Below are positions 5,701-64,000 of a DNA stretch of 64,000 bases, piece by piece (position 1 is the stretch's first letter; each line of letters begins with the position of its first letter). Source of the DNA: Laetmonice hystrix (taxonomy: Eukaryota). Both the position numbers and the translations under genes were made by a program. The stretch lies in assembly GCA_965235115.1 (NCBI GenBank), contig OZ249440.1, forward strand, positions 24,428,001 to 24,492,000, given 5' to 3'. The notes under the pieces were generated by a model. It was not told the origin of the DNA. It did not search any database and was given only the letters and a program-made list of their open reading frames with translations.

Positions 5701-8700
5701 TCTTACATCAAGAACACCTTGGGCTGAGGTTTCGGCTGCTGGTCTTCATTGTGCGCCCTCTAGCGGTGTAAGATCCGTCAAACTCGAACCGTTCCCCCGT
5801 CCTACCGGCAGCCAGCGTCGGCCCACCGCAATGTAGCTAACAAAACCTGCACAGCTGTGCTCTAACTGTTGCCACTTCCCTGCTGTTTTCTAAGTAAACA
5901 TGACTTAGAGTCCAAAGGGATCTCTTCACGTCAGAAGTGCTGCTCGGCTCAATGCTGCCTGAATTAAGTCAAACGATATCAAGATCTTCTCGGTCCGCAG
6001 TTATTCTCGCACAATGTGTCGTCAACTCCGCCAACTGTTTGATGTTCCAGCCGTCCCGAACCGCCGTGCCCGGTAGACACTACTTGTGGTCATCCTAGAC
6101 GCAGATGCTGCCAGAGATAGCATGAGGTTCTCTTCCTTTTCAGGGGGCAGGAGTCCGTCTAATTCAGTCAATAAATGAACAGAGAATGGTACGATTTCTC
6201 TTGTCTCCACAATTTGGTGTAACTCCAGGCATTCTTTTAACCAAATGCAAATAGACGTTTTTCATACATCAAAAATTATCTTCGAGTGGAAACTTCCAGT
6301 GATTTACAGCTCTCCTAAGTAATATCCCATTGTCCATGGTAATTACAATGTCCATTTAAAAAGCCCCAGGAATAGGACCTTTGAATGTATTGTAAGTCAA
6401 TATTAGTTTTTAAGTTTTCAGATCGAGTCTTACTGTTCCAAGCGGAACTCCGTTCGTTACCGCCCCGTTACACAGCAAGGAGACGATACACGTCGTGGTA
6501 TACAGACCCCGTATACTGCCGCAGACTGTATCCCACCCGAAGTTTCAATGAATCGCTTTAACCTGGGGACAAGTGGAGGAGGCTGGGCTCAAAAACCTCA
6601 CACAATGACCTCAGAGATGAAAGAGGATTTCGGGTAGTATAACGGTGATGAATGTTTTCTGCCTCCAATCCCACCTTGCTGAATACTGAGTTGATGCTCA
6701 GATCAAAGGAGAGGACGGGACGGGACCACCTGAGGCTCTGACAATGACGTAGGGTTCACAGTCCTCCTATGTGCTGACAGATCGGGGCCGTTACTCAATC
6801 CGAACGCTGTCTTCCATTTGTCCACACCGACTCCGTCCACCAGTCCTATATAACTTGTTCACACCCACTCCGTCCACCATTCCTAACTTGTCCACACCGA
6901 CTCCGTCCACCAGTCCTATATAACTTGTCCACACCGACTCCGTCCACCAGTCCTATATAACTTGTCCACACCGACTCCGTCCACCAGTCCTATATAACTT
7001 GTCCACACCGACTCCGTCCACCAGTCCTATATATAACTTGTCCACACCGGCTCCGTCCACCAGTCCTATATAACTTGTCCACACCGACTCCGTCCACCAG
7101 TCCTATATAACTTGTCCACACCGACTCCGTCCACCAGTCCTATATAACTTGTCCACACCGACTCCGTCCACCAGTCCTATATAACTTGTCCACACCGACT
7201 CCGTCCACCAGTCCTATATATAACTTGTCCACACCGACTCCGTCCACCAGTCCTATATAACTTGTCCACACCGACTCCGTCCACCAGTCCTATATATAAC
7301 TTGTCCACACCGACTCCGTCCACCAGTCCTATATATAACTTGTCCACACCGACTCCGTCCACCAGTCCTATATAACTTGTCCACACCGACTCCGTCCACC
7401 AGTCCTATATATAACTTGTCCACACCGACTCCGTCCACCAGTCCTATATAACTTGTCCACACCGACTCCGTCCACCAGTCCTATATAACTTGTCCACACC
7501 GACTCCGTCCACCAGTCCTATATATAACTTGTCCACACCGACTCCGTCCACCAGTCCTATATATAACTTGTCCACACCGACTCCGTCCACCATTCCTAAC
7601 TTGTCCACACCGACTCCGTCCACCAGTCCTATATAACTTGTCCACACCGACTCCGTCCACCAGTCCTATATAACTTGTCCACACCGACTCCGTCCACCAT
7701 TCCTAACTTGTCCACACCGACTCCGTCCACCATTCCTAACTTGTCCACACCGACTCCGTCCACCAGTCCTATATAACTTGTCCACACCGACTCCGTCCAC
7801 CATTCCTAACTTGTCCACACCGACTCCGTCCACCATTCCTAACTTGTCCACACCGACTCCGTCCACCAGTCCTATATAACTTGTCCACACCGACTCCGTC
7901 CACCATTCCTAACTTGTCCACACCGACTCCGTCCACCAGTCCTAACTTGTCCACACCGACTCCGTCCACCAGTCCTATATAACTTGTCCACACCGACTCC
8001 GTCCACCAGTCCTAACTTGTCCACACCGACTCCGTCCACCAGTCCTATATAACTTGTCCACACCGACTCCGTCCACCATTCCTAACTTGTCCACACCGAC
8101 TCCGTCCACCAGTCCTATATAACTTGTCCACACCGACTCCGTCCACCAGTCCTATATAACTTGTCCACACCGACTCCGTCCACCAGTCCTAACTTGTCCA
8201 CACCGACTCCGTCCACCAGTCCTATATAACTTGTCCACACCGACTCCGTCCACCAGTCCTATATAACTTGTCCACACCGACTCCGTCCACCATTCCTAAC
8301 TTGTCCACACCGACTCCGTCCACCAGTCCTATATAACTTGTCCACACCGACTCCGTCCACCAGTCCTATATAACTTGTCCACACCGACTCCGTCCACCAG
8401 TCCTATATAACTTGTCCACACCGACTCCGTCCACCAGTCCTATATAACTTGTCCACACCGACTCCGTCCACCAGTCCTATATAACTTGTCCACACCGACT
8501 CCGTCCACCAGTCCTATATATAACTTGTCCACACCGACTCCGTCCACCAGTCCTATATAACTTGTCCACACCGACTCCGTCCACCAGTCCTATATATAAC
8601 TTGTCCACACCGACTCCGTCCACCAGTCCTATATAACTTGTCCACACCGACTCCGTCCACCAGTCCTATATAACTTGTCCACACCGACTCCGTCCACCAG

Positions 8701-11700
8701 TCCTATATATAACTTGTCCACACCGACTCCGTCCACCAGTCCTATATATAACTTGTCCACACCGACTCCGTCCACCAGTCCTATATAACTTGTCCACACC
8801 GACTCCGTCCACCAGTCCTATATATAACTTGTCCACACCGACTCCGTCCACCAGTCCTAACTTGTCCACACCGACTCCGTCCACCAGTCCTATATAACTT
8901 GTCCACACCGACTCCGTCCACCAGTCCTATATAACTTGTCCACACCGACTCCGTCCACCAGTCCTATATAACTTGTCCACACCGACTCCGTCCACCAGTC
9001 CTATATAACTTGTCCACACCGACTCCGTCCACCAGTCCTATATAACTTGTCCACACCGACTCCGTCCACCAGTCCTATATAACTTGTCCACACCGACTCC
9101 GTCCACCAGTCCTATATAACTTGTCCACACCGACTCCGTCCACCAGTCCTATATATAACTTGTCCACACCGACTCCGTCCACCAGTCCTATATAACTTGT
9201 CCACACCGACTCCGTCCACCAGTCCTATATATAACTTGTCCACACCGACTCCGTCCACCAGTCCTATATAACTTGTCCACACCGACTCCGTCCACCAGTC
9301 CTATATAACTTGTCCACACCGACTCCGTCCACCAGTCCTATATATAACTTGTCCACACCGACTCCGTCCACCAGTCCTATATATAACTTGTCCACACCGA
9401 CTCCGTCCACCAGTCCTATATAACTTGTCCACACCGACTCCGTCCACCAGTCCTATATAACTTGTCCACACCGACTCCGTCCACCAGTCCTATATAACTT
9501 GTCCACACCGACTCCGTCCACCAGTCCTATATAACTTGTCCACACCGACTCCGTCCACCAGTCCTATATATAACTTGTCCACACCGACTCCGTCCACCAG
9601 TCCTATATAACTTGTCCACACCGACTCCGTCCACCAGTCCTATATAACTTGTCCACACCGACTCCGTCCACCAGTCCTATATATAACTTGTCCACACCGA
9701 CTCCGTCCACCAGTCCTATATATAACTTGTCCACACCGACTCCGTCCACCAGTCCTATATAACTTGTCCACACCGACTCCGTCCACCAGTCCTATATAAC
9801 TTGTCCACACCGACTCCGTCCACCAGTCCTATATAACTTGTCCACACCGACTCCGTCCACCAGTCCTATATAACTTGTCCACACCGACTCCGTCCACCAG
9901 TCCTATATATAACTTGTCCACACCGACTCCGTCCACCAGTCCTATATAACTTGTCCACACCGACTCCGTCCACCAGTCCTATATAACTTGTCCACACCGA
10001 CTCCGTCCACCAGTCCTATATATAACTTGTCCACACCGACTCCGTCCACCAGTCCTATATATAACTTGTCCACACCGACTCCGTCCACCAGTCCTATATA
10101 TAACTTGTCCACACCGACTCCGTCCACCAGTCCTATATATAACTTGTCCACACCGACTCCGTCCACCAGTCCTATATATAACTTGTCCACACCGACTCCG
10201 TCCACCAGTCCTATACATGTATAACTTGTTCACACCCACTCCGTCCACCATTCCTAACTTGTCCACACCGACTCCGTCCACCAGTCCTAACTTGTCCAAA
10301 CCGACTCCGTCCACCATTCCTAACTTGTCCACACCGACTCCGTCCACCATTCCTAACTTGTTCACACCGACTCCGTCCACTATTCCTAACTTGTTCACAC
10401 CGACTCCGTCCACCATTCCTAACTTGTTCTCACCGACTCCGTCCACCATTCCTAACTTGTTCACACCGACTCCGTCCACCATTCCTAACTTGTTCACACC
10501 GACTCCGTCCACCATTCCTAACTTGTCCACACCGACTCCGTCCACCATTCCTAACTTGTTCACACCGACTCCGTCCACCATTCCTAACTTGTTCACACCG
10601 ACTCTGTCCACCATTCCTAACTTGTTCACACCGACTCCGTCCACCTTTTCCATGCAGTCAGTCCATACTGAATCCATCCACCATTTTCAACCTGTCCACG
10701 TGACTGCCGTCCCCATTTGTCCATATACTGACTCTAACCACCCTCCCCATTTGTCCATATACTGACTCTAACCACCCTCCCCATTTGTCCATATACTGAC
10801 TCTAACCGCCGTCCCCATTTGTCCATATACTGACTCTAACCGCCGTCCCCATTTGTCCATACCCTGACTCTAACATTTATGGAAGAGTGAAAGTTGAGCT
10901 TTGATGTTTCTTTTACATTTTCAACCAGTTGCAGTCAGGTAGGTAATAGGTCGGCTCCTGTACTTAAAGTCTCGCCATGCATTTGTCACCAGTGCACACA
11001 GTGTGTGAACTGTTAATCTAACAATCTTTGCCTATGCAGTAAGAAACTTAAAGAGAGAAAAGGGAGAAAACAAGTGCAAAGACAAGATGGATATTGAATC
11101 AACCTTAGATCTTTCAGTCGGTGGGACATGTCGACATTAGTCAGGTATATGGGTTTAAATGTGGGCATTGGCGTCATGGTTTTGATGCGGGCAGGGCAGG
11201 GCAGGGGGAGGTTAAGGAATGGTGTACAGGTGGTCGTGATGTGACCGTGAGGACCGCTATACGTGGATGACGGCAGCTGGCCGATAAGTATCAAAGTAAT
11301 GTGTGGCGGGCCCACAGGACTCTGTTTGATCTTGGGATGTGCGCTCTATGGTACACAACACGTCAAAGGTCTCAACACACAAAGTGTTTAAGGATCATGT
11401 CGAGTGTGCCATTCGAGTTCACCTAAAACGCAGAGCACGTCGATACCGTACAGAGGTCTCTCTGAACGTCAAACGGTTCGACGGCCCCCCGCCCCCATTG
11501 CCTTTCGCGGGGTCAGGGGGTAGGCCTATTACGAGCAAGGAAGAAATCAACGACGCATAAAGGACTGAAAAATGTTGGACTGGGTTTGGGCAACGAGTAT
11601 AAACTCGTTGGTTTGGGGAGCGATGGTTTGGGTTATACCATGCATTGGGAAATCTGGTGGATAGTGCATTTATGGGCAAATCATCGAAATACTATATTTT

Positions 11701-12467
11701 TCTTTTGAAATGCACGGGCATCAGGGGTAACCCAATTACTTTGACAATGTCCCTAAAGAGAAAAGTTGTATAGTCCTCTACAGGAATCGAACCCAGGCCC
11801 TAAGATTACTGCACCCATTCGCATAGCATAAGGTGTCGACATCCATGCCCACTAGGCCACCGCCACTCCCGTATTTGGTTCGGGCAATCTCTCTTTGACT
11901 TAAATTTCTAATAAGATCTCTAAAATCGGAACATGACGTCGAAATATTATATTATTTCCAGGTGTCATAAAAGTTGCGGAAAAATTGGTAGGCATCTGTT
12001 ATTCTTGGAGGAAGAGATACAAGAACTAACCCTCTTCACTCCCATCAGGCACCTCCTTGACCCCCGGGTAAGTGTCGTAATGGCTGTGGGTGAGGGGGTG
12101 GGGGTGAGGGGGTGGGGGCCATCCCTGAGTGTCACTCATTCCTGGGCCACCCTCACAGTGTCCTGAGACCCGCTCGGGGGGACGGCCTGACGGACAGCCT
12201 GACGGACGTACGGGTGGGCGGTGAGGGCAGATTGACAGCAGCAGCAGACGTCTCATACACTGCGGGCAGTTCACAGCCCATTCATTATCCATTCTGATCT
12301 CAAAGCAAGTATTTAAGTCATCAATAGATCGACTGTTCGGGCCAGCTTCTTCACGCAACCTTTCTCAAAGCAGCCCCCGCCAAACTCGGCAAGATCTGTG
12401 GCGTATATAGCCTATTTACAGCCCAGCTACTTTGAAGTAACGTCATACCTGGATCGTGCAGAGACAG
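2339..12467 (+). CDS. Unrecognised spliced protein-coding gene, partial model. Candidate exons 2339-2341 (ATG), 6144-6188, 6422-6633, 11962-12067, 12422-12467; probably continues downstream (e.g. 21961-22047).
   Basis: Pyrimidine-rich AG acceptors and GT donors with compatible phases (0,0,2,0,1) give one open frame: M|GAGVRLIQSINEQRM|IESYCSKRNSVRYRP...MKEDF|GCHKSCGKIGRHLLFLEEEIQELTLFTPIRHLLDPR|PSYFEVTSYLDRAET. For 11962-12067 only the required frame is open. No family recognised. Confidence 0.45.
5753..5766 (-). promoter_or_regulatory. CTCF-like motif CCGCTAGAGGGCGC
   Basis: Match to the CCASYAGRKGGCRS-type consensus on the minus strand. Confidence 0.5.
6818..10645. repeat. About 3.8-kb minisatellite; unit acttgtccacaccgactccgtccaccagtcctatata (37 bp) with 33- and 39-bp variants
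   Basis: About 100 tandem copies read directly. Explains all ORF-track entries from 7177 to 10765. Confidence 0.98.
10705..10874. repeat. 34-bp tandem repeat (ccccatttgtccatatactgactctaaccaccct), about 5 copies
   Basis: Direct repeats adjacent to the large array. Confidence 0.9.
11740..11870 (-). mobile_element. tRNA-derived SINE head remnant
   Basis: The minus strand carries an A-box TGGCCTAGTGG (11859-11849) and a B-box GGTTCGATTCC (11793-11783). Spacing is too long and stems are absent for a tRNA. Confidence 0.45.
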
Positions 12468-12701
12468 GTGAGTTTAGTCGCCGGTAACTTAAACCGTACA
12501 GAAATATTGCATCCGTGCTACAACATCTGAATTAGTCTCAGGTGTGTAAGGGGATAGGAGCTAACCCGAGATGAAAATCAAACCTTACGGGAAAACATGG
12601 CGGTTAATGCCAGACAGGTGCTCGACGCGTACAATTGTTCAATTGAAATCACACTTAGACTTAGTAGACCTGTTGCTTGCAGAGCTTAGTGTCATGTCTG
12701 G

Positions 12702-13298
12702 TGTTACGGATAGATCCTCACATAGTTGTATTTCATATCTACAGGATGTATGTTCATGTCTCTGATAAGTCATGTCTTTTCTTATTGTATGTTCTGTCAT
12801 CTTCTGTTTGTTAACGAGCCCATATGGACGGATTAGTGTTTGTGATAAAGCCGCCAACCCCTGGCCACGTCTGGCCAGGCTGACACCTTTGAAGTGTCAA
12901 GGGTGTGAATGCCTTCTGGCTCCACCCATACTTGTTATGATGACAGTCAGCTTTCTATGTTTAACTTTAATCCGTATTGTAGTATTCTTTATTGTTAGGA
13001 CTGTCTCTCTATGTAATGTTCTGGACTATATAAGAGTCAAGTTAAGTTTGAGTTGGCAATCAGTTGGAGAACCACTGCAAGGGAGAATCAGTTGGAGAAC
13101 CACTGCAAGCAAGAGATCAGTTGGACAACCACTGTCAGTCAGCTAGCAACTTGGAATAGAGTCCGTTGGAATCCCACTTGCTCTACCATTTGCCATATTG
13201 TACCTGAACTGAAGAAGAATAGTAAACCATCGTCAACACAGCAACCAACTAGTTATCGTTACGAACGTTTTGGAATACCAACAATCATAACGGTGACA
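12702..13298 (+). repeat. 5' LTR
   Basis: TG...CA ends, TATA-like ctatataag at about 13026, and three internal atcagttgga(g/c)aaccactg repeats. Confidence 0.95.
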
Positions 13299-13402
13299 AA
13301 TGGTGTGAGAACCCGGCTCTTGTAAGTTCTATCCTTGCAAGCGATCTATAGTTGCTGTGGTACATCATCCGAACGGTACCTGAACGTCAACACTCCCACA
13401 TT

Positions 13403-14668
13403 ATGACGATGGATAGACCACAACCTACAACTACCTGCCACAGATGCGGTTTACCGAGGACAACATCCTTCCATCAATGTCCAGCGTATGGACGATACTG
13501 CTTTACCTGCGGTCGTCCAAACCATCTGGCCAAGGTATGTTTTACCCGGCTTGCCGCACTTCATCAAAAGCCAAGGAAGACGGCTAAACAACTGCAGAGG
13601 GACAGGAGACGCATGGCAAACTTCCTCCAAAAGAAGAACTCCATGTCCTCCCTGCCTTACTCCTCCATTCCAGACCAAGATATGTGCAACGACCTTCCAA
13701 CCAAGACGTCCAGAAATGTGATAACCAGGCTTACACAACTAAACGAAAACCTTCGGAAAGAAGTAAATGAAGTAAGATTATACAAGCAACAGTTTCCACA
13801 AAGAAATCAGACCACAGATGCAACCACGCAGACCACCACAACAACCTCTGAGGCATCAAGTCAAACGGCCTCCGATTCGGTTTCCACCACAGTTACAGAG
13901 CTGCAGCAACTGCAGGGAACAGTTTCCTCCCTGAAAGCTGAAGCTGCTGCTCTCCGTTCTAGTTGTGCCCAGCTACTTGCCAAAGGACAAGAAGACTATT
14001 CTGTATTCAAGGAAGAGACAATGACACTGGCAAAAACTACCATGAAGCAAGAGGCCGAAATTGCGAAACTAAAACAGCAGGCAAAGGAATCCCTCGACAC
14101 AGTAAGAAGTCTTTCCAATGTCATAGCTATGAAAAATAAGGAAATAGAAGACTTCAAGTCTACCATCAAGCAAAATGACCAGTTTGTCAGCCATCAGGAC
14201 CCCAGCAAAATGGAACTGGCTGTAGATTTTGCAGACCATCTCTTTCTGGCAGACTTCTTTGAACACTCACGACTATCCGACCTTCCATTTTTAAACGACG
14301 TATGGCCACAAGTTTCACCCTCAAATTCCATGCTACCTGTGCACATTTCCTTTGGAGCCAAGATCTTTACACGCGAGATCAAGCTCAAGCCTGTCTTGAG
14401 GCAGCAACGACAACTACTGTCTGAAGACGTATCTCGTATGTATTTTGAGAATGGTGACCTCCAGTCCACCTTCATTGTGAAAGTAAATGATCACCACTTC
14501 CGCCTTATGGACAAGGTTCCCCTTGGGACCCTACCACAGATGATCCTGGGCCAAGAACTAAGGACCACCATGGTTCTCCATGATCGCCACAATGTATTCC
14601 TCTGTGACTGTGACTTTCCCGACACCAGCGACGAGTATGACCCATACCCACCATGTCCTAACATGTAA
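13403..14668 (+). CDS. Retroelement ORF (421 aa from the first ATG): N-terminal Gag-type double zinc knuckle, coiled coil, unknown C-terminal domain
   Basis: Uninterrupted ORF between the LTRs. CHRCGLPRTTSFHQCPAYGRYCFTCGRPNHLAKVC fits the Gypsy/Mag Gag two-knuckle pattern, with a canonical CX2CX4HX4C second knuckle. A heptad-rich helix runs ELQQLQGTVSSLKAE...KEIEDFKSTIKQ. Confidence 0.85.
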   Translation: MTMDRPQPTTTCHRCGLPRTTSFHQCPAYGRYCFTCGRPNHLAKVCFTRLAALHQKPRKTAKQLQRDRRRMANFLQKKNSMSSLPYSSIPDQDMCNDLPTKTSRNVITRLTQLNENLRKEVNEVRLYKQQFPQRNQTTDATTQTTTTTSEASSQTASDSVSTTVTELQQLQGTVSSLKAEAAALRSSCAQLLAKGQEDYSVFKEETMTLAKTTMKQEAEIAKLKQQAKESLDTVRSLSNVIAMKNKEIEDFKSTIKQNDQFVSHQDPSKMELAVDFADHLFLADFFEHSRLSDLPFLNDVWPQVSPSNSMLPVHISFGAKIFTREIKLKPVLRQQRQLLSEDVSRMYFENGDLQSTFIVKVNDHHFRLMDKVPLGTLPQMILGQELRTTMVLHDRHNVFLCDCDFPDTSDEYDPYPPCPNM

Positions 14669-15186
14669 AAGGACGGCATTCACTCTCTCTTGTTGGTTGA
14701 ACTTTTCATTTTTATGTGTGAAATCCACAGATTATTTTTATCAGCAACAGATAGACTTTCAACAAGTCATATTATAATTGTGTCTCTGACTGATGTAGGT
14801 CAACAATCTTATAATTTGTAATTTGTGTGTATGTTTTCCCACACTTGGAGTACTTTTATATTATGTTTGCGTTCCTGATATAGTTTGAAGAACAACGTTA
14901 CTGAGGAGTACGGCCAGTCTTACCGGCTTATCCGAGTAAAGGATTTTTGTAAGCTCAATTTCAACAAGGATAGGCCTAGCCAGTATTTGTATGATATCTT
15001 GTTTTCTATCGGACTTATAATGTCATGTTTGCATCCTTACATATGTCATTTATGTTATCTATCAGGATCTATTTTTCACGCCTTTGATAAATTACCATTT
15101 GAATGAGAAAATGTTATGTTAAAACGGCAAAGGTATGATTATTTGCAGCGTGCGGAGTCGCTGCTTTTTCCCGACCTCGGGGGCAA

Positions 15187-15783
15187 TGTTACGGATAGAT
15201 CCTCACATAGTTGTATTTCATATCTACAGGATGTATGTTCATGTCTCTGATAAGTCATGTCTTTTCTTATTGTATGTTCTGTCATCTTCTGTTTGTTAAC
15301 GAGCCCATATGGACGGATTAGTGTTTGTGATAAAGCCGCCAACCCCTGGCCACGTCTGGCCAGGCTGACACCTTTGAAGTGTCAAGGGTGTGAATGCCTT
15401 CTGGCTCCACCCATACTTGTTATGATGACAGTCAGCTTTCTATGTTTAACTTTAATCCGTATTGTAGTATTCTTTATTGTTAGGACTGTCTCTCTATGTA
15501 ATGTTCTGGACTATATAAGAGTCAAGTTAAGTTTGAGTTGGCAATCAGTTGGAGAACCACTGCAAGGGAGAATCAGTTGGAGAACCACTGCAAGCAAGAG
15601 ATCAGTTGGACAACCACTGTCAGTCAGCTAGCAACTTGGAATAGAGTCCGTTGGAATCCCACTTGCTCTACCATTTGCCATATTGTACCTGAACTGAAGA
15701 AGAATAGTAAACCATCGTCAACACAGCAACCAACTAGTTATCGTTACGAACGTTTTGGAATACCAACAATCATAACGGTGACA
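15187..15783 (+). repeat. 3' LTR
   Basis: Identical copy of 12702-13298, followed by the TSD CTGG. Confidence 0.95.
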
Positions 15784-17504
15784 CTGGCAAACTGAACTGT
15801 TGTTTCTATAAGTAAGTCATGACTCTGTGTGACTTTAAATCATCATGAATCGGTTGAATATTAAATTACATGATTCTAAATACTTGATTCTAATTACATG
15901 ATTCTAAATACTTATGTTTCTGGATCAGTCTTTCAAAATGTTTTGTATACGCAAAGTTATTGTTCGAATGTCTCGCATTAGACATATTATTTTATTGGGG
16001 TTCCCTCTTGAGGATAATCATTATTCTCATCATTTATGAAAATGGTGATAATGATACATATCTATTACTTCAGTCGGAAACGTCAGGAGATCTAGTTATT
16101 TTCCAGATGGCCTAGGACGAAAAAAAATCCCTGTCTGCTGTCTTGTCTTTACTGTTGCATCACGCACTTAAAGGGACTGTGCGCAAGGCCTGGATTCAGC
16201 CTCGGTGCCGTTATTGTTGGCCACCCTTCCATAATGACTCCGCTGGCCACCAGATTGCCCTTCTCCGGGTACCGGCCAATGCTGCTCTCACATCGACCTG
16301 ACACACCATCAGTTGACACACAAGGGATTACTATCATTAATTGACACACAAAAGAGGTCTGATGGCTGACAGAATGGACGAAGCAAATGGAGTTGGCCAA
16401 TAAGGTCGATCTGACCTCTCCCAACTTGACCATTTGTTGTAGTCTTTGCTGCCCGTCCAGTGCCCCGAACATGACTCAAGCCCGGCCGAACACATAATTC
16501 ATCTATAGCGGCGGAATTCCCCCCGCCGGAGAAGGGTATAGAGGATTGTGGCCTTCCCGCCACGGGTTTGCGATCCAAACACTCCAAACATTATTTCTAA
16601 TTTATCAGATGTCCTTACGGGAAACTTTGATGCTCTTTCTGCGTTACCACTTCGTTATTTTAAAATGCATCATTTAGTTACTCCCGTGATGTAATGGAAG
16701 AATTCGGTGCACTCAGTTATTCAGGAGCCCTCAGGTTAGGGATGGTCATAGATAAATTATCTACATCCAGTGTTTTATGAACTATATTTATGTAGCTTTA
16801 CTCATCAGTAAACAATCAGTAGAGGATCATAAAATTGGTCTTAATGAAACGCATGAAACATTGATGCCCCGGGCGTGTTTGGCGTCTGAGCGTCCCAACT
16901 ACATCAGCTGTACAGGTTAGCAGACGCCAGTGAAAGTTGATTATTTTGTAGCAAGCAGTTTCAATATATAAAATTCCAGCAGTAAAGAATCTTCTCCCTG
17001 TGAATTAAAATAAATGACGTCGGTATATCATCTTGCAACATAATTATAAGTTCCACCATTGGCAGTCATACTTCCTAGCTGCCATGAAACAAAAAACATC
17101 AGTTTCCTATACGAAGAGAGCTTTACGAGACTGGGAGATTTGAATCTCCGTCAGTGCGATCATGTAGCAGTCGAGCTACAGGAGTTTGCAGAGAGGAGTT
17201 CCAGTCAAGAGTTCCCAACCAGGAGTTCCTGCCGGGAGAGCCGAGCCGAGCCAAGCAGTGTCGGATTCCCGCCAATTTGGGCTCGCATGCCGGGGAAACG
17301 TTGGTGAGGGGTGCGAGCGAGCATGTCCAGCGGAGACTGTCCCTGAGGTTGGGAGGGGCTGAGTGCAGGGTATAGGCCCACCCCCAGCGGGAGGTGTAGG
17401 GTTTCTTCTGTAGTAATTGCCGTACTGACTGTGTTGGAGGACAGGGGACTCCCGGGGTCACCCCAGGCCTCATCAGCACGTGGCCAGCGCTCACTGGTAC
17501 CCCG

Positions 17505-19759: not shown

Positions 19760-21028
19760 TGGACGTTGTGACAATCACTGGCAATCAACGGTTGTGGCGC
19801 CGGGTAAGGGTTGTGGCGTTGTATGTGTACAGGTTGTGGTGCTGGGTACGGGTTGTGGCGTTGTATGGGTACAGGTTGTGGCGCCGGGTACGGGTTGTGG
19901 CGTTGTATGGGTACAGGTTGTGGCAATCACTGGCAATCAACGGTTGTGGCGCCGGGTACGGGTTGTGGCGTTGTATGAGTCCAGGTTGTGGCAATCACCG
20001 GCAATCAAGGGTTGTGGCGCCGGGTACGGGTTGTGGCGTTGTATGGGTACAGGTTGTGGCGCCGGGTACGGGTTGTGGCGTTGTATGGGTACAGGTTGTG
20101 GCGCCGGGTACGGGTTGTGGCGTTATATGGATACAGGTTGTGGCGCCGGGTACGGGTTGTGGCGTTGTATGGGTACAGGTTGTGGCGCCGGGTACGGGTT
20201 GTGGTGTTGTATGAGTACAGGTTGTGGCGCCGGGTACGGGTTGTGGCGTTGTATGGGTACAGGTTGTGGCGTTGTATGGGTACAGGTTGTGGCGCCGGGT
20301 ACGGGTTGTGGCGTTGTATGGGTACAGGTTGTGGCGCCGGGTACGGGTTGTGGCGTTATATGGATACAGGTTGTGGCGCCGGGTACGGGTTGTGGCGTTG
20401 TATGGGTACAGGTTGTGGCGCCGGGTACGGGTTGTGGCGTTGTATGGGTACAGGTTGTGGCGCCGGGTACGGGTTGTGGCGTTATATGGATACAGGTTGT
20501 GGCGCCGGGTACGGGTTGTGGCGTTATATGGATACAGGTTGTGGCGCCGGGTACGGGTTGTGACGTTGTATGGGTACAGGTTGTGGCGCCGGGTACGGGT
20601 TGTGGTGTTGTATGGGTACAGGTTGTGGCAATCACTGACAATCAACGGTTGTGGCGCCGGGTACGGGTTGTGGCGTTGTATGGGTACAGGTTGTGGCGCC
20701 GGGTACGGGTTGTGGTGTTGTATGAGTACAGGTTGTGGCAATCACTGGCAATCAAGGGTTGTGGCGCCGGGTACGGGTTGTGGCGTTGTATGGGTACAGG
20801 TTGTGGCGCCGGGTACGGGTTGTGGCGTTGTATGGGTACAGGTTGTGGCAATCACTGACAATGAACGGTTGTGGCGCCGGGTACGGGTTGTGGCGTTGTA
20901 TGAGTCCAGGTTGTGGCAATCACTGACAATGAACGGTTGTGGCGCCGGGTACGGGTTGTGGCGTTGTATGGGTACAGGTTGTGGCGTTGTATGGGTGCAG
21001 GTTGTGGCGTTGTATGGGTCCAGGTTGT
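19760..21028. repeat. 42-bp minisatellite built from 21-bp half-units (gggtacaggttgtggcgccgggtacgggttgtggcgttgtat)
   Basis: About 30 units read directly. A stop-free unit of 3n length produces overlapping ORFs on both strands. Confidence 0.97.
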
Positions 21029-26040: not shown

Positions 26041-27055
26041 CGGGACGGTATGGTTACAGGGTAGTATAGGACAGTATGGTTACAGTATGGGACGGTATGG
26101 TTGCAGGGTAGTATGGGACAGTATGGTTACAGTATGGGACGGTATGGTTACAGTATGGGACGGTATGGTTACAGGGTAGTATAGGACAGTATGGTTACAG
26201 TATGGGACGGTATGGTTGCAGGGTAGTATGGGACAGTATGGTTACAGTATGGGATGGTATGGTTACAGTATGGGACGGTATGGTTACAGGGTAGTATGGG
26301 ACAGTATGGTTACAGTATGGGACGGTATGGTTACAGGGTAGTATGGGACAGTATGGTTACAGTATGGGACGGTATGGTTACAGGGTAGTATGGGACGGTA
26401 TGGTTACAGGGTAGTATAGGACAGTATGGTTACAGTACGGGACGGTATGGTTACAGTATGGGACGGTATGTTTACAGTATGGGACGGTATGGTTACAGGG
26501 TAGTATGGGACGGTATGGTTACAGTATGGGACGGTATGGTTACAGGGTAGTATGGGACAGTATGGTTACAGTATGGGACGGTATGGTTACAGTATGGGAC
26601 GGTATGGTTACAGGGTAGTATGGGACAGTATGGTTACAGTATGGGACAGTATGGTTACAGTATGGGACGGTATGGTTACAGTATGGGACGGTATGGTTAC
26701 AGTATGGGACGGTATGGTTACAGTATGGGACGGTATGGTTACAGTATGGGACGGTATGGTTACAGGGTATAGTATGGGACAGTATGGTTACAGTACGGGA
26801 CGGTATGGTTACAGTATGGGACGGTATGGTTACAGTATGGGACGGTATGGTTACAGGGTATAGTATGGGACAGTATGGTTACAGTACGGGACGGTATGGT
26901 TACAGTATGGGACGGTATGGTTACAGTATGGGACAGTATGGTTACAGTATAGGACAGTATGGTTACAGTATGGGACGGTATGGTTACAGGGTAGTATGGG
27001 ACGGTATGGTTACAGGGTAGTATAGGACAGTATGGTTACAGTACGGGACGGTATG
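26041..27055. repeat. 21-bp minisatellite (gggacggtatggttacagtat) with longer variant units
   Basis: About 40 units read directly. Confidence 0.97.
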
Positions 27056-31554: not shown

Positions 31555-33484
31555 TCCGTCCAGCCTGGCCTGGCCGTGCGTGTGGGTCTGGGCTAATACC
31601 TTTAGCTGGTCGGTGGGAGATGTCTGCACTAGATCACAATAGCTTTTAGAACATTAACTTGGCACTTTGTGAGCGGAAGGCTATATTATGTTGAGCATGT
31701 TGTTGTCAAATCCTCCGTAAACAGAAATGACTGAATGTGGTGGAAGAGGTTTGAATCTATGATTATAGAATGTAGCCATATAGAATGTAGCATAAAATCC
31801 TAATAAAATCATTTCTTAATATTGCATTATCGTATGGATGTCATGAAGGGGACGTTAGAATTGAGTCTAAGCCATTTGGCAGCAGACTGGGATATACATG
31901 GGGTAGGAGAAAATATTTGGCGGTGAGTTATTGTTATTTCTGGCTCAATACCATCAACAGTCCATAATCCTCTCACGGCATCGCCGGGCGATTACTGGAG
32001 TAGTGAGGCCCACACAGGAGGCGTGCCAGGGGGTCACCTTATCCTGTTTCCTCAACTGAATCTTCACTAAGTGTTATTGGATTTAGAATTGATGCCTGAG
32101 AAGACCCACTTCCTGGAGCAGTGCTAAGCACTTGGACTGTCATTGTGGTATAGTTGGAGTGGTTTGCAGCCAACTGAACAGCAGCAGCCAAGGCCGGGGT
32201 GAGCTGCCTTTTGATTGGCTCTGCGGTGTTCAGTGCGGCCGGTGAACGGCCCGCCGCCGCCGCCGGCCCGCGTGAGGCCCGGGGGCGGCAGGCACGGGGA
32301 GTAGTTGGCTTGGTGGTGGGAGGCGCTACCAGCAGAGATAGGGAGGAGATCGAGCCTCGCGGACACCATGGAGTTGTGTCGCCGGTAAGCCGCCACAATC
32401 AGCTCTGACGCCGGGCCTACAGCGACCAGCTTGAGTTATCTGAACACTGCTGTCTGACACACCAGACAGCCCGCTGGATCCAAGCATCGCTTACTTATAG
32501 AGGAAGCTATAGACACCTTAATACTTTGCCTCGAGGATCAAACTGTAATCAGATCTTTTAAAGAAGCATCTTGGAAGCGAGAGCTCCAAGAGGTTCACTT
32601 TCTCATGACGTCCTTCATAAAAAGGATGTCCAGTGTCATCCACCGTCACTAGGCCTCAATAATACCAACCGAGCTACAACCCCGTGAGCAGCTGAAGTTG
32701 GAGAAGTTGAAAGATTAAGTGTTGACGGAGAGAGATGTAGAGATTACCGTATATACTAAGTTTACAGGAGGTGGATATCCTTACGTGCCGTCAGCGTGAG
32801 ATGTCCGCTGGAGATCGACGATCGAGCTGACTCGTTCTACACCAGTGATTGCCGGCCGAGTCGGCCCCACACTCGGGTGTTTCCTTACGGGCGACACTTC
32901 CCCGTCAGTCACTACCAGAATATTCGCCGGGTGTTCCTCCTTGACATCCTCCGACACATTGCTTGTTTGTTCAAGTCGTCTTTATGCAGTGAAAAGATGT
33001 GAGTAGAAATATTTGTACAAGACGCTGTCTCTTCACTGATATTGCGTCATTCACAACGGCACCAAAACAAATTGAGGGTTAGCTGTCCATCAACGTGTAC
33101 GGTGCATGGGATTCCGGGATATTACTTTACTTCTGATCATGTCTTGGGTCTGATAATTCAGTTCAAACAGTCCAGACTTTAGCCGTTGTATTTTGGCACT
33201 GAAAAGAAGCGTTGTCGATGCAGATAGTGAGCCTATAAAAAGGCAGGCTCTATATATAGCCTGTTTTGTGACATCCGAACAGAGCTTCTAGTTACAAATA
33301 ACTGCAGAAAATGACTGCGGGTGATGCTTACATTATGTATGATAATGTAAAAGTTTGTGAACACGTCTCGGATACTCGGATGTAAAGCTGTGAGTTTGTC
33401 AGCGATTGCCAACAAAAACTAAAGTGGCAAGCACACAGGTTATTCCTCCGTGATAACATTCGAAAGAGATTGGGGTGATGGGGT

Positions 33485-34200
33485 AGGGGCAGGGATGGGG
33501 AATGTTTTGGGGAGGTCTGGGGACCTGGAGTAGGAGTTAGGGGCAGGGATGGGGGATGTTTTGGGGAGGTCTGGGGACCTGGAGTAGGAGTTAGGGGCAG
33601 GGATGGGGGATGTTTTGGGGAGGTCTGGGGACCTGGAGTAGGAGTTAGGGGCAGGGATTGGGAACGTTTTGGGGAGGTTTGGGACCGGGAGTAGGAGTTA
33701 GGGGCAGGGGTGGGGAACGTTTTGGGGAGGTCTGGGACCGAGAGTAGGAGTTAGGGGCAGGGATGGGGAATGTTTTGAGGAGGTCTGGGGACCGGAAGTG
33801 GGAGTTAGGGGCAGGTATGGAGAACGTTTTGGGGAGGTCTGGGGACCGGAAGTGGGAGTTAGGGGCAGGTATGGAGAACGTTTTGGGGAGGTCTGGGGAC
33901 CGGAAGTGGGAGTTAGGGGCAGGTATGGAGAACGTTTTGGGGAGGTCTGGGGACCGGGAGTAGAGTTAGGGGCAGGGGTGGGGGACGTTTTGGGGAGGTC
34001 TGGGGACCGGGAGTGAGAGTTAGGGGCAGGGATGGAGAACGTTTTGAGGAGGGATGGAGACCGGAACTGAGAGTTAGGGGCAGGGATGGAGAACGTTTTG
34101 AGGAGGGATGGAGACCGGAAGTGGGAGTTACGGGCAGGGATGGACACGTTTTGAGGAGGGATGGAGACCGGAAGTGGGAGTTACGGGCAGGGGTGGGGAT
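33485..34200. repeat. G-rich 54-55-bp minisatellite, about 13 copies, drifting in sequence along the array
   Basis: ggggcagggatggggaatgttttggggaggtctggggacctggagtaggagtta is repeated. Confidence 0.95.
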
Positions 34201-34648
34201 AGGGAACGCCCGACTTCATGGATCTAAGATCTAGCACGGGCATATCTCGGAGTTAAAGGGAATAGAAAAGTTCAAACTATCAATATAAGGGTGTTCAGCA
34301 TGAACAAGCTTGTTCTTACCTACAATTCTGTGATTATCTGATCTTTAATAAAGGAATAATCAACCGAAATGTAGAGACATTCTCCCGCTGGCTTCGTCGG
34401 TTTGTTTACCCTATTTGGCCATTATCTCAATCTATTAATAGATATAGCTCCCGCTGTCTCGCGTGGGAAATAGCGAATGACCCGGGCGGTATTTTTAAAA
34501 AGTCGCCGTAGACAGTGTTCCACTTATCGGTGTGACCTTAGACACTTTATATGATGTTACTGGTGTTCAAAGGTACGTTAGTGAGGAACTTTTGCTTTAG
34601 GTTTAACTCGCGACAAAACTGTCTCATCCTGGCCAGTCTGCGGTTCTA

Positions 34649-35237
34649 TAGAGTGAGTCAAAAAAACTAGACACTTTTTAAAAGGCCCACTGTTTTATTG
34701 TGTACCAATATATACAATATATTTTTGCTTGTGCTTATGGAGCAATTCTTCCTGCATCTTTTGGTACCAGTCATGCTTGATTGGTGTTCATGCATGACCG
34801 CACAGGAGACAATTAAGGGACAAGGGTAAAATCTGACCTGCGCCAACTGACCAGAGCTGGGTATGAACAAAAATCAACCAAGGCTCTTTGCTGAGGAGTG
34901 AATTGTGGACGCACCATACTGTTGCAGTGCCAAGAAGGCCTAATGAGGCCTATGAGCACGTGTGTGTGATTTGAATTAACTGATTAAACCAGGGGCATGA
35001 ACATTACTTGGCTATCCATTTCATATCCAGCTCTGATCAGTTGGCGCAGGTCAGATTTCACCCTTGTCCCTTAATTGTCTCCTGTGCGGTCACGCATGAA
35101 AACCAATCAAGCATGACTGGTACCAAAAGATGCAGGAGGGTTGCTGCATAAGTACAAGCAAAAATATATTGTATATATTGGTACACAATAAAACAATGGG
35201 CCTTTTAAAAGTGTCTAGTTTTTTTTTACTCACCCTG
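34649..35237. mobile_element. Tc1/mariner-type non-autonomous fold-back element, 589 bp, about 215-bp TIRs, TA TSD
   Basis: Left arm tagagtgagtcaaaaaaactagacac... is the reverse complement of right arm ...gtgtctagtttttttttactcaccctg. TA at 34647-48 and 35238-39. Confidence 0.9.
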
Positions 35238-37645
35238 TATAAGAGTTACTGCGACTGACAATTTACCCGCAGTCTTATGACATAACTCCGCTAGGGGAGG
35301 ATCTCCACAGGGCCGATCTTCACGAAAACAACCACAATTCGGCTCACATCTATAACACCCTAGTCCCTACACACACAAAAAAAAAGCCCTAGAGCCCCAC
35401 ATGACCAAAAACATCGGCGATGTTGTAGATATATAGTTATGAGACGCGTACAAAAAGATGGCCCAAGGCGGGCACTCGTCTCAGGCCTGCACCAGGGCCA
35501 GATTCGTGTAACTCTCTATCAATGTTTGGGGCCAAACTCAAGCTCATGCATCCTAGTTTTTTGTTAAATTCTTCGGGCTTTGTGCAACGTAAAAAGGTTG
35601 TATTAGCTTCTGTAACCCGACAGGCAAAGCTGACAGAAAGTTGATATTAAGCTTTCACTGTATTTTATACATGTATCCAAAGGATTACCTAGAACATAGC
35701 TGCGAGCGTAAAAAAAACTTTGTACTTTGAAGCAAAATGAATTATTTATTGTTTAAAAGTATGTTTAAAATATGCCAGCATGGGGTAATCGGTTTTTGTT
35801 GTAAAAGGATAAGGAGTTGTATGCACAAATAACGAGAAGCGTGATAAGATGAGTCCATCAACACGCGCCGGCCAACTATGTCTGGATAATGGCCAAGTTC
35901 TCTTTCTCATTTAGAAGCCAAAAGAACCACTCAATCCTCAAATCCATATAAACCAGACATAGTGCTGAGGTTTTAACGTTTTTTTCACATTTCGGTGTAA
36001 AAATGAGGCGCATTCTATCATCTTGATGTGCTCTGAGGGCAGTGATACCGGTAAACAAATAAATGTACACAACAGTGACCTCTGGCGACGGGAGTGTGTA
36101 ACTCTCCCCCTGACAGCCGTGGCTTTGACAGTTGCAGTATTTACACGGTTGAAATGGACTGAAAAGCACCTGAAAAGGCACTTAATAGAGGCAATAGAAG
36201 CACCTAAATCATACGGTGCTCCACTTATCAGTTGGTGCCTTATCTTTGAGTGTTATTTGTTATCAGTGAGCACATACCGGTTTACACCCCGGATGTAGCG
36301 TTATCAGCGGCTCCCAGAGAAACTGTTTATAATGTGGTGTAATCCATTTACTGGAGAAGAATATACAAGTAGACGTCAGTGAGATGTCATACCGGTTGGA
36401 ATGGATTCCCTTTTGTGCCTTGGGTCTCTCAGGTCGCTGTGTGGTTATACAGATAAATAGGATAGTATCGGGGAACAGTTTATTGGCAGCCATTTCTAGA
36501 CTCGTCCAACAGGGTTAGTTCAGGAAACTGTATAAATTATAAAGAAAAATTTGTGCAGAGAGGGGTGGGAGTACAGAATACTGGAATGGCCTTTGAGGGT
36601 GTGCATCGATTTGGTATTGAAAAAGGCAACATCATCGAAATATATACTTATGAATTAAGGTTTTGAACAGCGTTCATTATACCAGTGTTTTGCATCCTTG
36701 CGCCATTCCACTATATGTATACAAGAAGAAAAGGTTCTACCCGGCATATTGGCTCGATACCCAGTGTCCATTCCATCCTTCGTGTTGGCTATGGCGCACG
36801 AGTCCGAAATGGATCAGAGGTCTGGATGGTGACAATCCCCAGACTTGATTGAAATGTCACTGACATAGATATCTAATAAATGTGTCGCGGACATCCGTCC
36901 AGAGATCAGACATATATTGTCACTAAGCTGATAAACCTGGCCTTGGCCTGGCCCCAGCAGGTGATAACGTGCAGGTGATTGCTCGCACCTGTGCTGGCCA
37001 CAGAAGGTCAAAGGTCACCGAGATGTGGGTTGTTGCTGACAATTTACAAAGTGGCCTCCTGTCTCTAATTTCCAACGTAAATACACGTGACTGGTGTGAT
37101 TAGAGTCTTGATGATGACGTTAGAACGCAGCTCCCAAACCCTGCTGAAAACCTTAGAATTTGGGATCTCAAAGTTTTGTCTTACTGCGTGAGTAAGTAGG
37201 CCTACTACAGCGAGTTCGAACAAGTCTTAGGAATATAGAACTAGAAAAATAAGATTTTATTTTAGATGAGATGAGCCCCTAAAAGTGCCTAAAGGTCGAA
37301 TGTCGGACAGTGACATGGGATCAGGGGTGATAGCGACCCGAACTTTGAAGATCAAGGATTGGAATTTGGAGGTCAAACAAGTGGGTGTGACCAGTCAGAG
37401 CAATTTTAGCTGGACCCTTCGGGATATCAAGAACACTTATTGCCGAGATCAGCGCAGGGACTTCATCGTTTCCATGGTAATTGGCCAAATGCGATTCAAA
37501 TTAGAACTGGCCCACTGGTTGAGCAGACACCGCAGGCCAGGACTAGGAACGGGTTAGAACTCAGCGGTGGGGCTGACCATGTCAACTAGCTGAAAACTTG
37601 AAAGGCATGATATACAAAAGCGGTGGGTTGTATTTGTCTTGTTAG

Positions 37646-37782: not shown

Positions 37783-38765
37783 ACTTTGACCTTCCTGCAG
37801 CCAACAACGGATTCTTCGATGAGATATATCAAACCAATTGCGCCATCAAATCCACGTTCTCAGTTTTACTCGATGGCAGTTTGTTAAATCAGCAGAATGT
37901 TAAATAAGTCCCCTTTCCTCTGTTTGCACTATGTTTAATTGTTCGTATGAAACAGAGAGGTTGCAGATGATATGATAACGTGAGCTATATAATCTTCTAT
38001 AATTATTTCAGTTCTGAAACTCGGAGGGTTGTAAGTTGTAAGCACTGGCAAGGTCTCCCACATTATATTCAAGGTTTTTATTAGGAATGGAAGCCGTTAC
38101 TCAGTCAGTCATACCGTGAGAATCCTATCTAAGTATGTTTGCACTGATATAACATGTAACCTGAACCAATGACTTTAATAAGCTCTGCCAATTTCGGACG
38201 GATGTCTGATTCTGCTCTGGTGTGAATACCAGTTACTGCAAATAATCCTTGTCATTGCTCCAAGAACCCGGGTCTTCACATCTGGACGCCTTCCTACCCT
38301 GAGTCAGTCCGGAGATCTTACCCCCTGAGGGGGTAACAAGGGCGAAGTCAATTAGCGAGTGATCACAAGGGGTAATTTGTGTGGGGCAGATAGTCCTGGT
38401 AGAGTATTGGTTCCTGTATCAGTAACATGCCACTGTATAGAAGCGGAGAGATAGCCATGATTACTCAAGCTCACCCAAACTTCATGTAGGCATTAACGAT
38501 AAGGCCGACAGAGGCAAACAATCCCGGATGTGTTTCCATGACAACATGGCACACTCATTTGAGGATGCTCTGTATGATTGCATATTGACCACCTTTGGAC
38601 CCCATTGCCGGGCAGCTGAATTAAAACTCTCATGTCGCGGTTTAGTTTTGTAATCCCCATTGTTTGAACATGGACAGTGAATCACATCTATAGGCAGCAG
38701 TTTGATTGGTTTGGGAGATTCGGGATTTGAAACCGTATAGATAACTGTCACTTTATAATCCCTAA

Positions 38766-39220: not shown

Positions 39221-39223
39221 TAA

Positions 39224-39678: not shown

Positions 39679-39800
39679 TAACTGACGCATACACTCTGGA
39701 TGCCTGCACGCCCTGCCTATAGTTGATGATATACAGTATGTCCCCAAAAATGATAGTATGTGTTCCGTTGTCAAAAAGAGATACTGGTTGTGATCAGTAA

Positions 39801-47155: not shown

Positions 47156-47261
47156 GGGTGGACGGAGACGCTCCCTGGGCCGACCGGCGAGACTGAACGT
47201 TGGGCCCGGGGCTTAGTACACGCACCGCCGTGGACTGTGAAGGCTGCATGCTGACTCTTCC

Positions 47262-63949: not shown

Positions 63950-64000
63950 GTGAGGCGTGATTCAACCCAGACATGGCCATGTTCACCCCATCAAAATATT

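What the first reader, a model, noticed from the sequence alone, without database searches (positions are those of the whole stretch)
12702..15783. Very young pol-less LTR retroelement keeping one intact protein gene
Seen: two 597-bp LTRs identical by eye, a clean CTGG TSD, a PBS-like TGG site, a purine tract, and a 1.9-kb interior holding a single open 421-codon ORF with no protease, RT, RNase H or integrase. Established: LTRs are identical at integration, so identity implies recent transposition, and pol-less elements must be mobilised in trans. Inference: this is an active non-autonomous family that keeps its own coding cargo, unlike typical non-coding TRIM/LARD elements. It may be undescribed.
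Basis: partly seen in the sequence, partly recalled or inferred. Interest (0 to 1): 0.8.

Follow-up and report, generated by a model that had tools for sequence, protein, structure and literature searches.

The report
Young pol-less LTR element, unusual gene
This is a real, recently inserted 3.1-kb LTR retrotransposon with no replication enzymes, whose one intact gene encodes an odd Gag-position protein that another genome also keeps in pol-less copies; it is an unusual variant of a known kind of parasitic mobile element.

Summary
Window 12702-15783 is an LTR element with two 597-bp LTRs that are 597/597 identical. It has TG..CA ends, a CTGG/CTGG target-site duplication, a TGG primer-binding-like site, a short G-rich tract and a 1888-bp interior. 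The interior holds one open 421-codon ORF and has no room and no Pfam signal for protease, RT, RNase H or integrase.

The protein is not a canonical Gag. It has two nucleocapsid-like zinc knuckles at the N terminus, a long coiled coil, and a strongly conserved, probably beta-rich C-terminal domain with no detectable relative.

Its only relatives among about 15 billion proteins come from one other, eukaryote-like assembly. There it is a dispersed multi-copy family with at least two subfamilies. All 11 loci inspected lack an adjacent pol, and one locus carries three tandem units only 2036 bp apart.

So this is a conserved pol-less lineage, not a one-off deletion. The kind is already described in plants as TR-GAG (a non-autonomous LTR element that keeps a gag-position ORF). 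The protein architecture is new.

Three things could not be tested: activity in this genome, the autonomous partner, and the host species. Verdict: new variant of a known kind, moderate interest.

The parts
12698..12701 (+). Left target-site duplication, CTGG
   Evidence: Read directly from the sequence; matches 15784-15787.
12702..13298 (+). 5' LTR, 597 bp, TG...CA ends
   Evidence: 100% identical to 15187-15783, and the bases outside both ends differ.
13027..13034 (+). TATA-like box inside the LTR (same site in the 3' LTR at 15512-15519); inferred promoter
   Evidence: Pattern scan. Consensus match only; function is inferred.
13058..13134 (+). 28-bp tandem repeat, 2.7 copies, inside the LTR just downstream of the TATA-like box (also at 15543-15619)
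13221..13226 (+). AGTAAA, a variant poly(A)-signal-like hexamer in the LTR; no canonical AATAAA is present
   Evidence: Pattern scan. Inference only.
13301..13318 (+). Primer-binding-site-like stretch beginning TGG, 2 nt after the 5' LTR
   Evidence: Read directly from the sequence. The matching tRNA was not identified; there is no tRNA gene in the window.
13403..14668 (+). Intact ORF, 421 aa plus stop; the only long ORF of the interior, in the gag position
   Evidence: Homologues are P0001 and its cluster members.
13436..13540 (+). Residues 12-46: two zinc knuckles. The first is non-canonical (CX2CX8HX1C); the second is canonical CX2CX4HX4C.
   Evidence: Pfam zf-CCHC scores 19.0 bits against a cut-off of 20.8. 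In the profile search of the PDB the top 15 hits (E 0.02-0.3) are retroviral Gag proteins, 14 of them matched in the nucleocapsid two-knuckle region. All 8 Cys/His positions are conserved in four sequences that share 34-53% identity.
13868..14179 (+). Residues 156-259: one long helix, probably a coiled coil
   Evidence: In the AlphaFold2 model this helix has pLDDT 65-84, the only confident part. Pfam gives only sub-threshold coiled-coil families: Filament, TMF_DNA_bd, Fib_alpha, APG6_N.
14225..14617 (+). Residues 275-405: conserved C-terminal domain of unknown fold, predicted to be mainly beta-hairpins
   Evidence: 101 of 150 residues (271-420) are identical to P0001 with no gaps, against 4-13 identities per 30-residue block over residues 1-150. 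There is no Pfam or PDB hit. Only two hits turned up in 1.84 billion representative proteins. The models are of low confidence.
14669..15178 (+). Non-coding 3' part of the interior
   Evidence: Its short ORFs have no Pfam hit. There is no Rfam hit at E<=1.
15179..15186 (+). Short polypurine-like tract, GGGGGCAA, abutting the 3' LTR
   Evidence: Read directly from the sequence. It is weak: 7 purines in 8 bases.
15187..15783 (+). 3' LTR, 597 bp
15784..15787 (+). Right target-site duplication, CTGG
   Evidence: Read directly from the sequence.

Best explanation
Window 12702-15783 is a structurally complete, recently integrated, non-autonomous LTR retrotransposon. It belongs to a lineage-restricted family whose members carry a single maintained gene and no pol. 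The steps below are inferred, not shown. The LTR supplies a promoter (the TATA-like box) and a polyadenylation site. The transcript encodes a 421-aa protein in the gag position. That protein's N-terminal double zinc knuckle binds or chaperones nucleic acid, as a retroviral nucleocapsid does. Its long coiled coil makes it oligomerise. Its conserved C-terminal domain supplies a function that selection maintains, most plausibly assembly of, or docking to, the particle of a helper element. Reverse transcription, primed at the TGG site, and integration, which makes the 4-bp duplication, must be carried out by RT, RNase H and integrase supplied in trans by an unidentified autonomous LTR element of the same genome. 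In function the protein would act as LINE-1 ORF1p does: it coats its own RNA and gives that RNA privileged access to borrowed enzymes. This corresponds to the 'semi-autonomous' TR-GAG strategy described in plants.
For: Shown in the window: identical 597-bp LTRs, TG..CA ends, a 4-bp TSD, PBS-like and PPT-like sites, and an interior too small for pol. The ORF is intact and far longer than chance allows. The only Pfam domain signal in the ORF is a zinc knuckle, and there are no enzyme domains. The N terminus resembles the retroviral two-knuckle nucleocapsid, weakly but consistently. The long helix is modelled with the best confidence in the protein. Shown in the other genome: the family is present on at least 13 contigs. 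Copies of the main subfamily differ by 0-7 residues. A second, diverged subfamily exists. No RT or integrase lies downstream of, or adjacent to, the gene at any of the 11 loci inspected. Pfam hits are on record elsewhere in that assembly (RVT_1, Exo_endo_phos_2, SET), so their absence next to the gene is informative. Three tandem units sit 2036 bp apart. Tandemly arranged copies are reported as common for non-autonomous LTR elements (PMC13570524). Both lineages keep an ORF of more than 420 codons open at about 50% amino-acid divergence, and conservation is concentrated in one domain. That pattern implies purifying selection. Established knowledge: LTRs are identical at integration, and elements without pol depend on enzymes supplied in trans.
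Against: No capsid-like domain was detected, so calling the protein a Gag rests on its position and its zinc knuckles alone. The zinc-knuckle matches are below Pfam's cut-off and weak in the PDB search (E about 0.02). The fold of the C-terminal domain is unknown (pLDDT about 30), so its role is a guess. No autonomous partner, solo LTR or second copy from the source genome could be examined. DNA of the related copies was unavailable, so their LTRs, PBS and dN/dS are untested. Identical LTRs can also result from gene conversion. The polypurine tract is short.
Confidence: 0.72

Rival explanations
1. The element is a one-off internal deletion of an ordinary autonomous gag-pol LTR element, so the ORF is simply that element's gag and there is no pol-less family.
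For: Only one copy lies in the window, and the source genome could not be searched. Deleted derivatives of autonomous elements are common (general knowledge).
Against: At all 11 loci inspected in the only other genome that has the protein, no pol is adjacent, and the tandem period of 2036 bp leaves no room for one. The protein has no capsid domain. A search without length limits, using the C-terminal domain, found no polyprotein that contains it.
Confidence: 0.1
2. The ORF is a captured or domesticated host gene that now merely sits between LTRs, or a host tandem gene family, and plays no part in the element's own life cycle.
For: The domain order (knuckles, then coiled coil, then an unknown beta-rich domain) is not that of a Gag. 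No capsid was detected. Three tandem copies occur in the other genome. The conserved domain has no relative among retroelement families in Pfam.
Against: The ORF starts 104 bp after the 5' LTR, in the gag position, and opens with a nucleocapsid-like double knuckle. The family is dispersed over at least 13 contigs, with near-identical, truncated and diverged copies; that is the profile of a mobile repeat, not of a host gene. No longer or single-copy host homologue appeared in either protein search.
Confidence: 0.12
3. The second LTR is an assembly artefact, or the LTR identity reflects gene conversion, so the element is not young.
For: Perfect identity over 597 bp is what a mis-joined repeat or a recent conversion would also give. 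No reads are available.
Against: The repeat is bounded exactly by TG and CA. It is flanked by a matching 4-bp duplication and unrelated flanks, and it encloses PBS-like and PPT-like sites in the correct places. An assembly duplication would not produce that arrangement.
Confidence: 0.05

Closest known systems
TR-GAG elements (terminal-repeat retrotransposons with a GAG domain, described in plants)
   Same: Both have LTRs with PBS and PPT, a TSD, a length under 4 kb, one ORF in the gag position, and no protease, RT, RNase H or integrase. Both are regarded as 'semi-autonomous' and dependent on a helper for enzymes (PMC13570524).
   Different: TR-GAG ORFs are recognisable Gag proteins with capsid and related domains. 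Here only nucleocapsid-like knuckles are detectable, and they sit at the N terminus, followed by a coiled coil and an unknown domain. The host is unknown. The only other assembly that carries the family also holds RVT_1 and Exo_endo_phos_2 ORFs typical of eukaryotic retroelements.
TRIM and LARD non-autonomous LTR elements
   Same: Both lack pol, have LTR, PBS, PPT and TSD, depend on a helper, and tend to form tandemly arranged copies (PMC13570524; tandem array).
   Different: TRIMs (<1-1.5 kb) and LARDs (>4 kb) are defined as non-coding. This element is 3.08 kb and keeps a conserved, intact gene.
BARE-2 of barley
   Same: It is a non-autonomous partner within an LTR retrotransposon family that relies on proteins of a related element (reference list of PMC13570524: 'Life without GAG').
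   Different: The defect is the opposite one. BARE-2 lacks a functional Gag and keeps pol; this element keeps the gag-position gene and lacks pol.
LINE-1 ORF1p (a likeness of mechanism only)
   Same: Both pair a coiled-coil oligomerisation segment with a nucleic-acid-binding module, in a retroelement's first ORF. From my own knowledge, ORF1p coats the RNA that encodes it.
   Different: Pfam gave no hit to the L1 ORF1 families. The element has LTRs and a 4-bp TSD, so it is not a LINE. The likeness is an analogy, not membership.
Retroviral and retrotransposon nucleocapsid (the NC domain of Gag)
   Same: Both have two adjacent Cys/His knuckles. The best PDB matches cover both knuckles of retroviral NC proteins.
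   Different: NC normally lies C-terminal to the capsid. Here it is the first 50 residues and no capsid follows. The first knuckle has non-canonical spacing.

Membership tests
LTR retrotransposon (structural definition) | Two direct long terminal repeats ending in TG...CA | tested here: met
   597-bp LTRs, 100% identical, with TG and CA at the ends.
LTR retrotransposon (structural definition) | Target-site duplication of 4-6 bp | tested here: met
   CTGG on both sides.
LTR retrotransposon (structural definition) | tRNA primer-binding site next to the 5' LTR and polypurine tract next to the 3' LTR | tested here: inconclusive
   A TGG-initiated stretch lies 2 nt after the 5' LTR, and an 8-nt G-rich tract lies before the 3' LTR. 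No tRNA was available to test complementarity.
TR-GAG | Absence of protease, RT, RNase H and integrase | tested here: met
   No Pfam hits. Only 622 bp of interior lie outside the ORF.
TR-GAG | A single ORF that is a recognisable Gag (capsid or other gag domains) | tested here: inconclusive
   Only a sub-threshold zf-CCHC match (19.0 against 20.8 bits) and weak nucleocapsid matches (E 0.02). No capsid or Retrotrans_gag family hit. The models are too poor to test for a capsid fold.
TR-GAG | Total length below about 4 kb | tested here: met
   3082 bp.
TR-GAG | A plant host, as originally described | not testable with these tools
   The source organism is not given. There is no informative host gene in the window.
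TRIM | Length under 1-1.5 kb and a non-coding interior | tested here: not met
   3082 bp with a conserved 421-aa ORF.
LARD | Length over 4 kb and a non-coding interior | tested here: not met
   3082 bp and coding.
Ty3/gypsy, BEL/Pao or Ty1/copia superfamily | RT and integrase phylogeny and pol domain order | not testable with these tools
   There is no pol in the element. The 4-bp TSD is only a weak hint against Ty1/copia (my own knowledge: copia elements usually make 5 bp).
Endogenous retrovirus | gag-pro-pol, with or without env, between the LTRs | tested here: not met
   No such domains. The protein begins with the zinc-knuckle region, read directly from its sequence; a signal peptide or transmembrane segment was not tested.
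LINE-1 ORF1p family | Sequence match to the ORF1p trimerisation, RRM or CTD families | tested here: not met
   No Pfam hit at E<=1 (whole ORF) or E<=10 (N- and C-terminal parts).
Retropepsin-like (pseudo)protease, considered for the C-terminal domain | Sequence or fold match to retroviral-type aspartic proteases | tested here: not met
   No Pfam hit at E<=10. No protease in the PDB profile search at E<=10. Foldseek gave nothing below E 0.6, on a low-confidence model.

The most novel reading that the evidence does not exclude
The element would belong to an old, self-sustaining lineage of pol-less LTR retroelements whose single protein is not a Gag in the usual sense. It would instead be an ORF1p-like RNA-coating protein (zinc knuckles, then a coiled coil, then a new beta-rich domain) that arose within or was acquired by an LTR element. 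On this reading the lineage persists across species as a specialised parasite of autonomous LTR elements. That would be a convergence between LTR and non-LTR retroelement strategies, built around a protein domain with no known relative.
Probability: 0.25. Interest if true: 0.65.

Novelty: new variant of a known kind. Interest (0 to 1): 0.42.

Why it matters
Non-autonomous LTR elements are usually thought of as non-coding shells, and 'gag-only' forms have been catalogued mainly in plants. This case is a pol-less LTR lineage that has kept one gene open and conserved across two genomes at about 50% protein divergence. That gene's architecture is not a standard Gag, and its best-conserved domain has no detectable relative in about 15 billion proteins. 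If confirmed, it would show that selection on a hitch-hiking retroelement can maintain, and perhaps invent, its own RNA-binding or assembly protein. It would also add a new domain to the retroelement protein repertoire. Practically, elements like this escape pol-based annotation and are likely to be under-counted.

Tried and rejected
(1) Fold of the ORF. AlphaFold2 on the 9-sequence alignment gave mean pLDDT 45.7, and the C-terminal domain alone gave 38.8. Foldseek against the PDB gave nothing better than E 0.6. These results are uninformative and were not used.

(2) My own idea that the C-terminal domain is a degenerate retropepsin found no support in Pfam or the PDB, so I dropped it.

(3) DNA of relatives. 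The exact protein is not on record. All related copies lie in one ENA assembly (ERZ26222911) whose DNA the tool could not deliver. As a result their LTR, PBS and TSD, and dN/dS, could not be examined. Scans of JGI metagenomes and of IMG/VR found nothing.

(4) Search for an autonomous partner. Both protein searches returned only members of this family. The word-indexed searches see only proteins of 232-737 aa, so a long polyprotein sharing only the N-terminal half would have been missed.

(5) Host identification failed. No tRNA or Rfam family was found in the window, and 18 other ORFs gave no significant Pfam domain, only one sub-threshold DUF5407 match.

(6) The bacterial-type promoter and terminator scan is irrelevant to a eukaryotic element and was ignored.

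Declared slip: in my reasoning I recalled from memory a few short generic motif patterns (retropepsin motifs, the tRNA T-loop) as leads. The degenerate pattern was back-translated from ten invariant columns of alignment A1. The consensus lines that the alignment tool printed were not used.
Full report
**1. Observation**

A direct-repeat search finds one long repeat pair in 12000-16500. Extending it base by base gives 597 identical positions, at 12702-13298 and 15187-15783. The bases immediately outside differ on both sides, so the boundaries are exact. A BLAST of the LTR and the interior against the whole window finds no further copy.

- The LTR begins with TG and ends with CA, and its terminal hexamers form an imperfect inverted repeat.
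- CTGG precedes the 5' LTR and follows the 3' LTR.
- Two bases after the 5' LTR a stretch begins with TGG. Immediately before the 3' LTR lies GGGGGCAA.
- The interior is 1888 bp. It contains one long ORF, from the ATG at 13403 to the stop at 14668, encoding 421 aa.
- The open stretch is 438 codons. In 2000 shuffles of the interior the longest stretch averaged 100 codons and never exceeded 247. The other two forward frames of the ORF contain 21 and 18 stops.

The only qualification is that the 'purine tract' is short.

**2. No pol**

Pfam finds no protease, RT, RNase H or integrase in the ORF, in the short ORFs of the 3' interior, or in the LTR-borne ORF. Outside the ORF the interior has only 104 + 518 bp, so there is no room for these genes. 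Rfam finds nothing in 11500-16000 at E<=1.

**3. The protein**

- *Residues 12-46* hold two Cys/His knuckles. The second has the canonical CX2CX4HX4C spacing. It matches Pfam zf-CCHC at 19.0 bits, just under the 20.8-bit cut-off.
- A profile of the family searched against all PDB sequences returns retroviral Gag proteins as its top 15 hits. In 14 of them the match falls in the nucleocapsid region, and the best matches span both knuckles. The E-values are weak, 0.02-0.3.
- All eight metal-ligand positions are conserved among four family members that share only 34-53% identity.
- *Residues 156-259* are modelled as a single long helix with pLDDT 65-84, the only confident part of the model. Pfam returns only sub-threshold coiled-coil families there.
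- *Residues 275-405* form the best-conserved part. Over residues 271-420, 101 of 150 positions are identical to the relative P0001 with no gaps. Over residues 1-150 each 30-residue block has only 4-13 identities, with many gaps.
- This domain has no Pfam hit at E<=10 and no PDB hit. AlphaFold2 suggests beta-hairpins but at pLDDT about 30, so the Foldseek result (best E 0.6) means nothing.

No capsid-type domain was detected. The protein occupies the gag position and starts with a nucleocapsid-like module, but it is not a canonical Gag.

**4. Relatives**

- Among 5.8 billion clustered proteins the ORF has one hit cluster: P0001, 434 aa, 48% identity over 95% of the query, 18 members.
- A profile search adds two diverged members, P0018 and P0019.
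- A search without an index or length limits, using the C-terminal domain against 1.84 billion representatives, finds only P0016 and P0017.
- Every member whose locus was looked up (11 proteins) comes from one ENA assembly, ERZ26222911; P0018 and P0019 are listed only as ENA. Contigs there reach 747 kb. The assembly also holds ORFs with RVT_1, Exo_endo_phos_2 and SET domains, so it looks like a eukaryotic genome.
- The family there lies on at least 13 contigs.
- Copies of the main subfamily differ by only 0-7 residues.
- Of the 20 proteins seen, two are full-length at 434 aa, two are 504-aa forms, and the rest are shorter (80-383 aa). I did not map how the shorter ones are broken.
- A second subfamily (P0017, P0018, P0019) is clearly diverged.

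**5. Is the pol-less state a one-off?**

I inspected the called genes within 10 kb on either side of 11 loci in that assembly. At none is the gene followed by, or adjacent to, an ORF with RT, RNase H or integrase domains. The only RVT_1 ORF seen lies 7.5 kb upstream on the opposite strand of one fragment. Because Pfam hits are on record for that assembly, this absence is informative.

On one contig three identical 434-aa genes lie exactly 2036 bp apart. That unit size excludes pol, and it compares with 2485 bp (LTR plus interior) in the window. Tandem LTR-interior-LTR-interior arrays are reported as widespread in non-autonomous LTR families (PMC13570524).

The pol-less, single-gene layout is therefore shared by lineages that differ at about half of their residues. 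Both also keep more than 420 codons open, with conservation concentrated in one domain. I take this as good indirect evidence of purifying selection on the gene in a pol-less context. The direct test, dN/dS, needs DNA that I could not obtain.

**6. Mechanism (inferred)**

The LTR carries a TATA-like box at 13027, a 2.7-copy 28-bp repeat just downstream, and a variant poly(A)-like hexamer at 13221. These are consistent with a U3/R/U5 layout, but the bounds are not established.

The transcript would encode the 421-aa protein. Its knuckles would bind nucleic acid and its coiled coil would oligomerise. The conserved C-terminal domain would do whatever selection is preserving, most plausibly particle assembly or docking to a helper's particle. 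Reverse transcription and integration must come from an autonomous LTR element in trans. The clean 4-bp TSD is the signature of an integrase, and its length is a weak hint towards a gypsy-type or BEL-type helper rather than a copia-type one (my own knowledge).

In function this resembles the way LINE-1 ORF1p serves its own RNA. That is an analogy only, because no ORF1p family matched.

**7. Age**

Zero differences in 597 bp puts a 95% upper bound of about 0.5% on LTR divergence. Age is below 0.005/(2r), where r is the host's substitution rate per site per year, and r is unknown here. 'Very young' is a fair reading. Gene conversion or an assembly error are the alternatives. The exact TG/CA bounds, the TSD and the correctly placed PBS-like and PPT-like sites argue against an artefact.

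**8. Comparison with what is known**

The category is known. TR-GAG elements are non-autonomous LTR elements that retain a gag ORF and lack the enzymes, and they are considered semi-autonomous (PMC13570524). They have been catalogued in many plant genomes. TRIM and LARD do not fit, because both are non-coding and have the wrong size. BARE-2 is the mirror case: it lacks Gag.

Three things differ here:
- the protein architecture (knuckles first, then a coiled coil, then an unrelated conserved domain, and no capsid);
- the extreme rarity of the protein in public data;
- its conservation across two genomes in a pol-less frame.

I therefore file it as a new variant of a known kind. I could not consult Repbase or Dfam, so the family itself may already have a name there.

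**9. What remains open**

- The host species.
- Copy number and activity in the source genome.
- The helper element.
- The tRNA primer.
- The fold and role of the C-terminal domain.
- Whether the related copies have LTRs and TSDs.

Noticed in passing
window 6818-10645; 47250-49395; 44494-45432; 26042-27055; 19790-21009; 33484-34199; 59172-59813: The window is unusually rich in long minisatellite arrays, for example 37 bp x ~105, 45 bp x 47.6 and 23 bp x 40. Several have strong strand GC skew, down to -0.58 and up to +0.56 per 2 kb. Most of the long 'ORFs' in the window are artefacts of these arrays.
   Followed up: partly
window 34644-34867 and 35020-35242: An inverted repeat pair of about 225 bp at 92% identity, separated by about 150 bp. 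It has a foldback or MITE-like structure.
   Followed up: no
window 57456-57621 and 62577-62734: Two inverted copies of a short dispersed repeat, about 82% identical over 169 bp.
   Followed up: no
window 38761-39681: A 458-bp unit repeated twice in tandem at 97% identity.
   Followed up: no
window 63617-64000 (+): A Cys-rich open stretch of 128 codons that runs off the end of the window. It is possibly a host exon. Pfam gives no hit.
   Followed up: partly
window 13058-13134 and 15543-15619: A 28-bp unit repeated 2.7 times inside each LTR, just downstream of the TATA-like box. It could be a regulatory or R-region repeat. Untested.
   Followed up: no
ENA assembly ERZ26222911, contig of 334678 bp (no locus id, DNA not delivered): Three identical 434-aa copies in tandem with a 2036-bp period, bracketed on both sides by a duplicated 323-aa gene (weak EamA match) on the opposite strand.
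   Followed up: partly
ENA assembly ERZ26222911, eight copies: A 73-aa ORF is called just after the stop of the main ORF at eight copies: 15 bp after it at seven, 93 bp at the eighth. It has no Pfam hit. It may be a second small gene or a chance ORF in the 3' interior or LTR. The window's element shows no equivalent arrangement.
   Followed up: no
window 50426-50574: A run of 149 N.
   Followed up: no
window, whole: CpG observed/expected is 0.66 for the window and 0.56 for the element, at about 46% and 43% G+C. This is moderate CpG depletion and does not identify the host.
   Followed up: no
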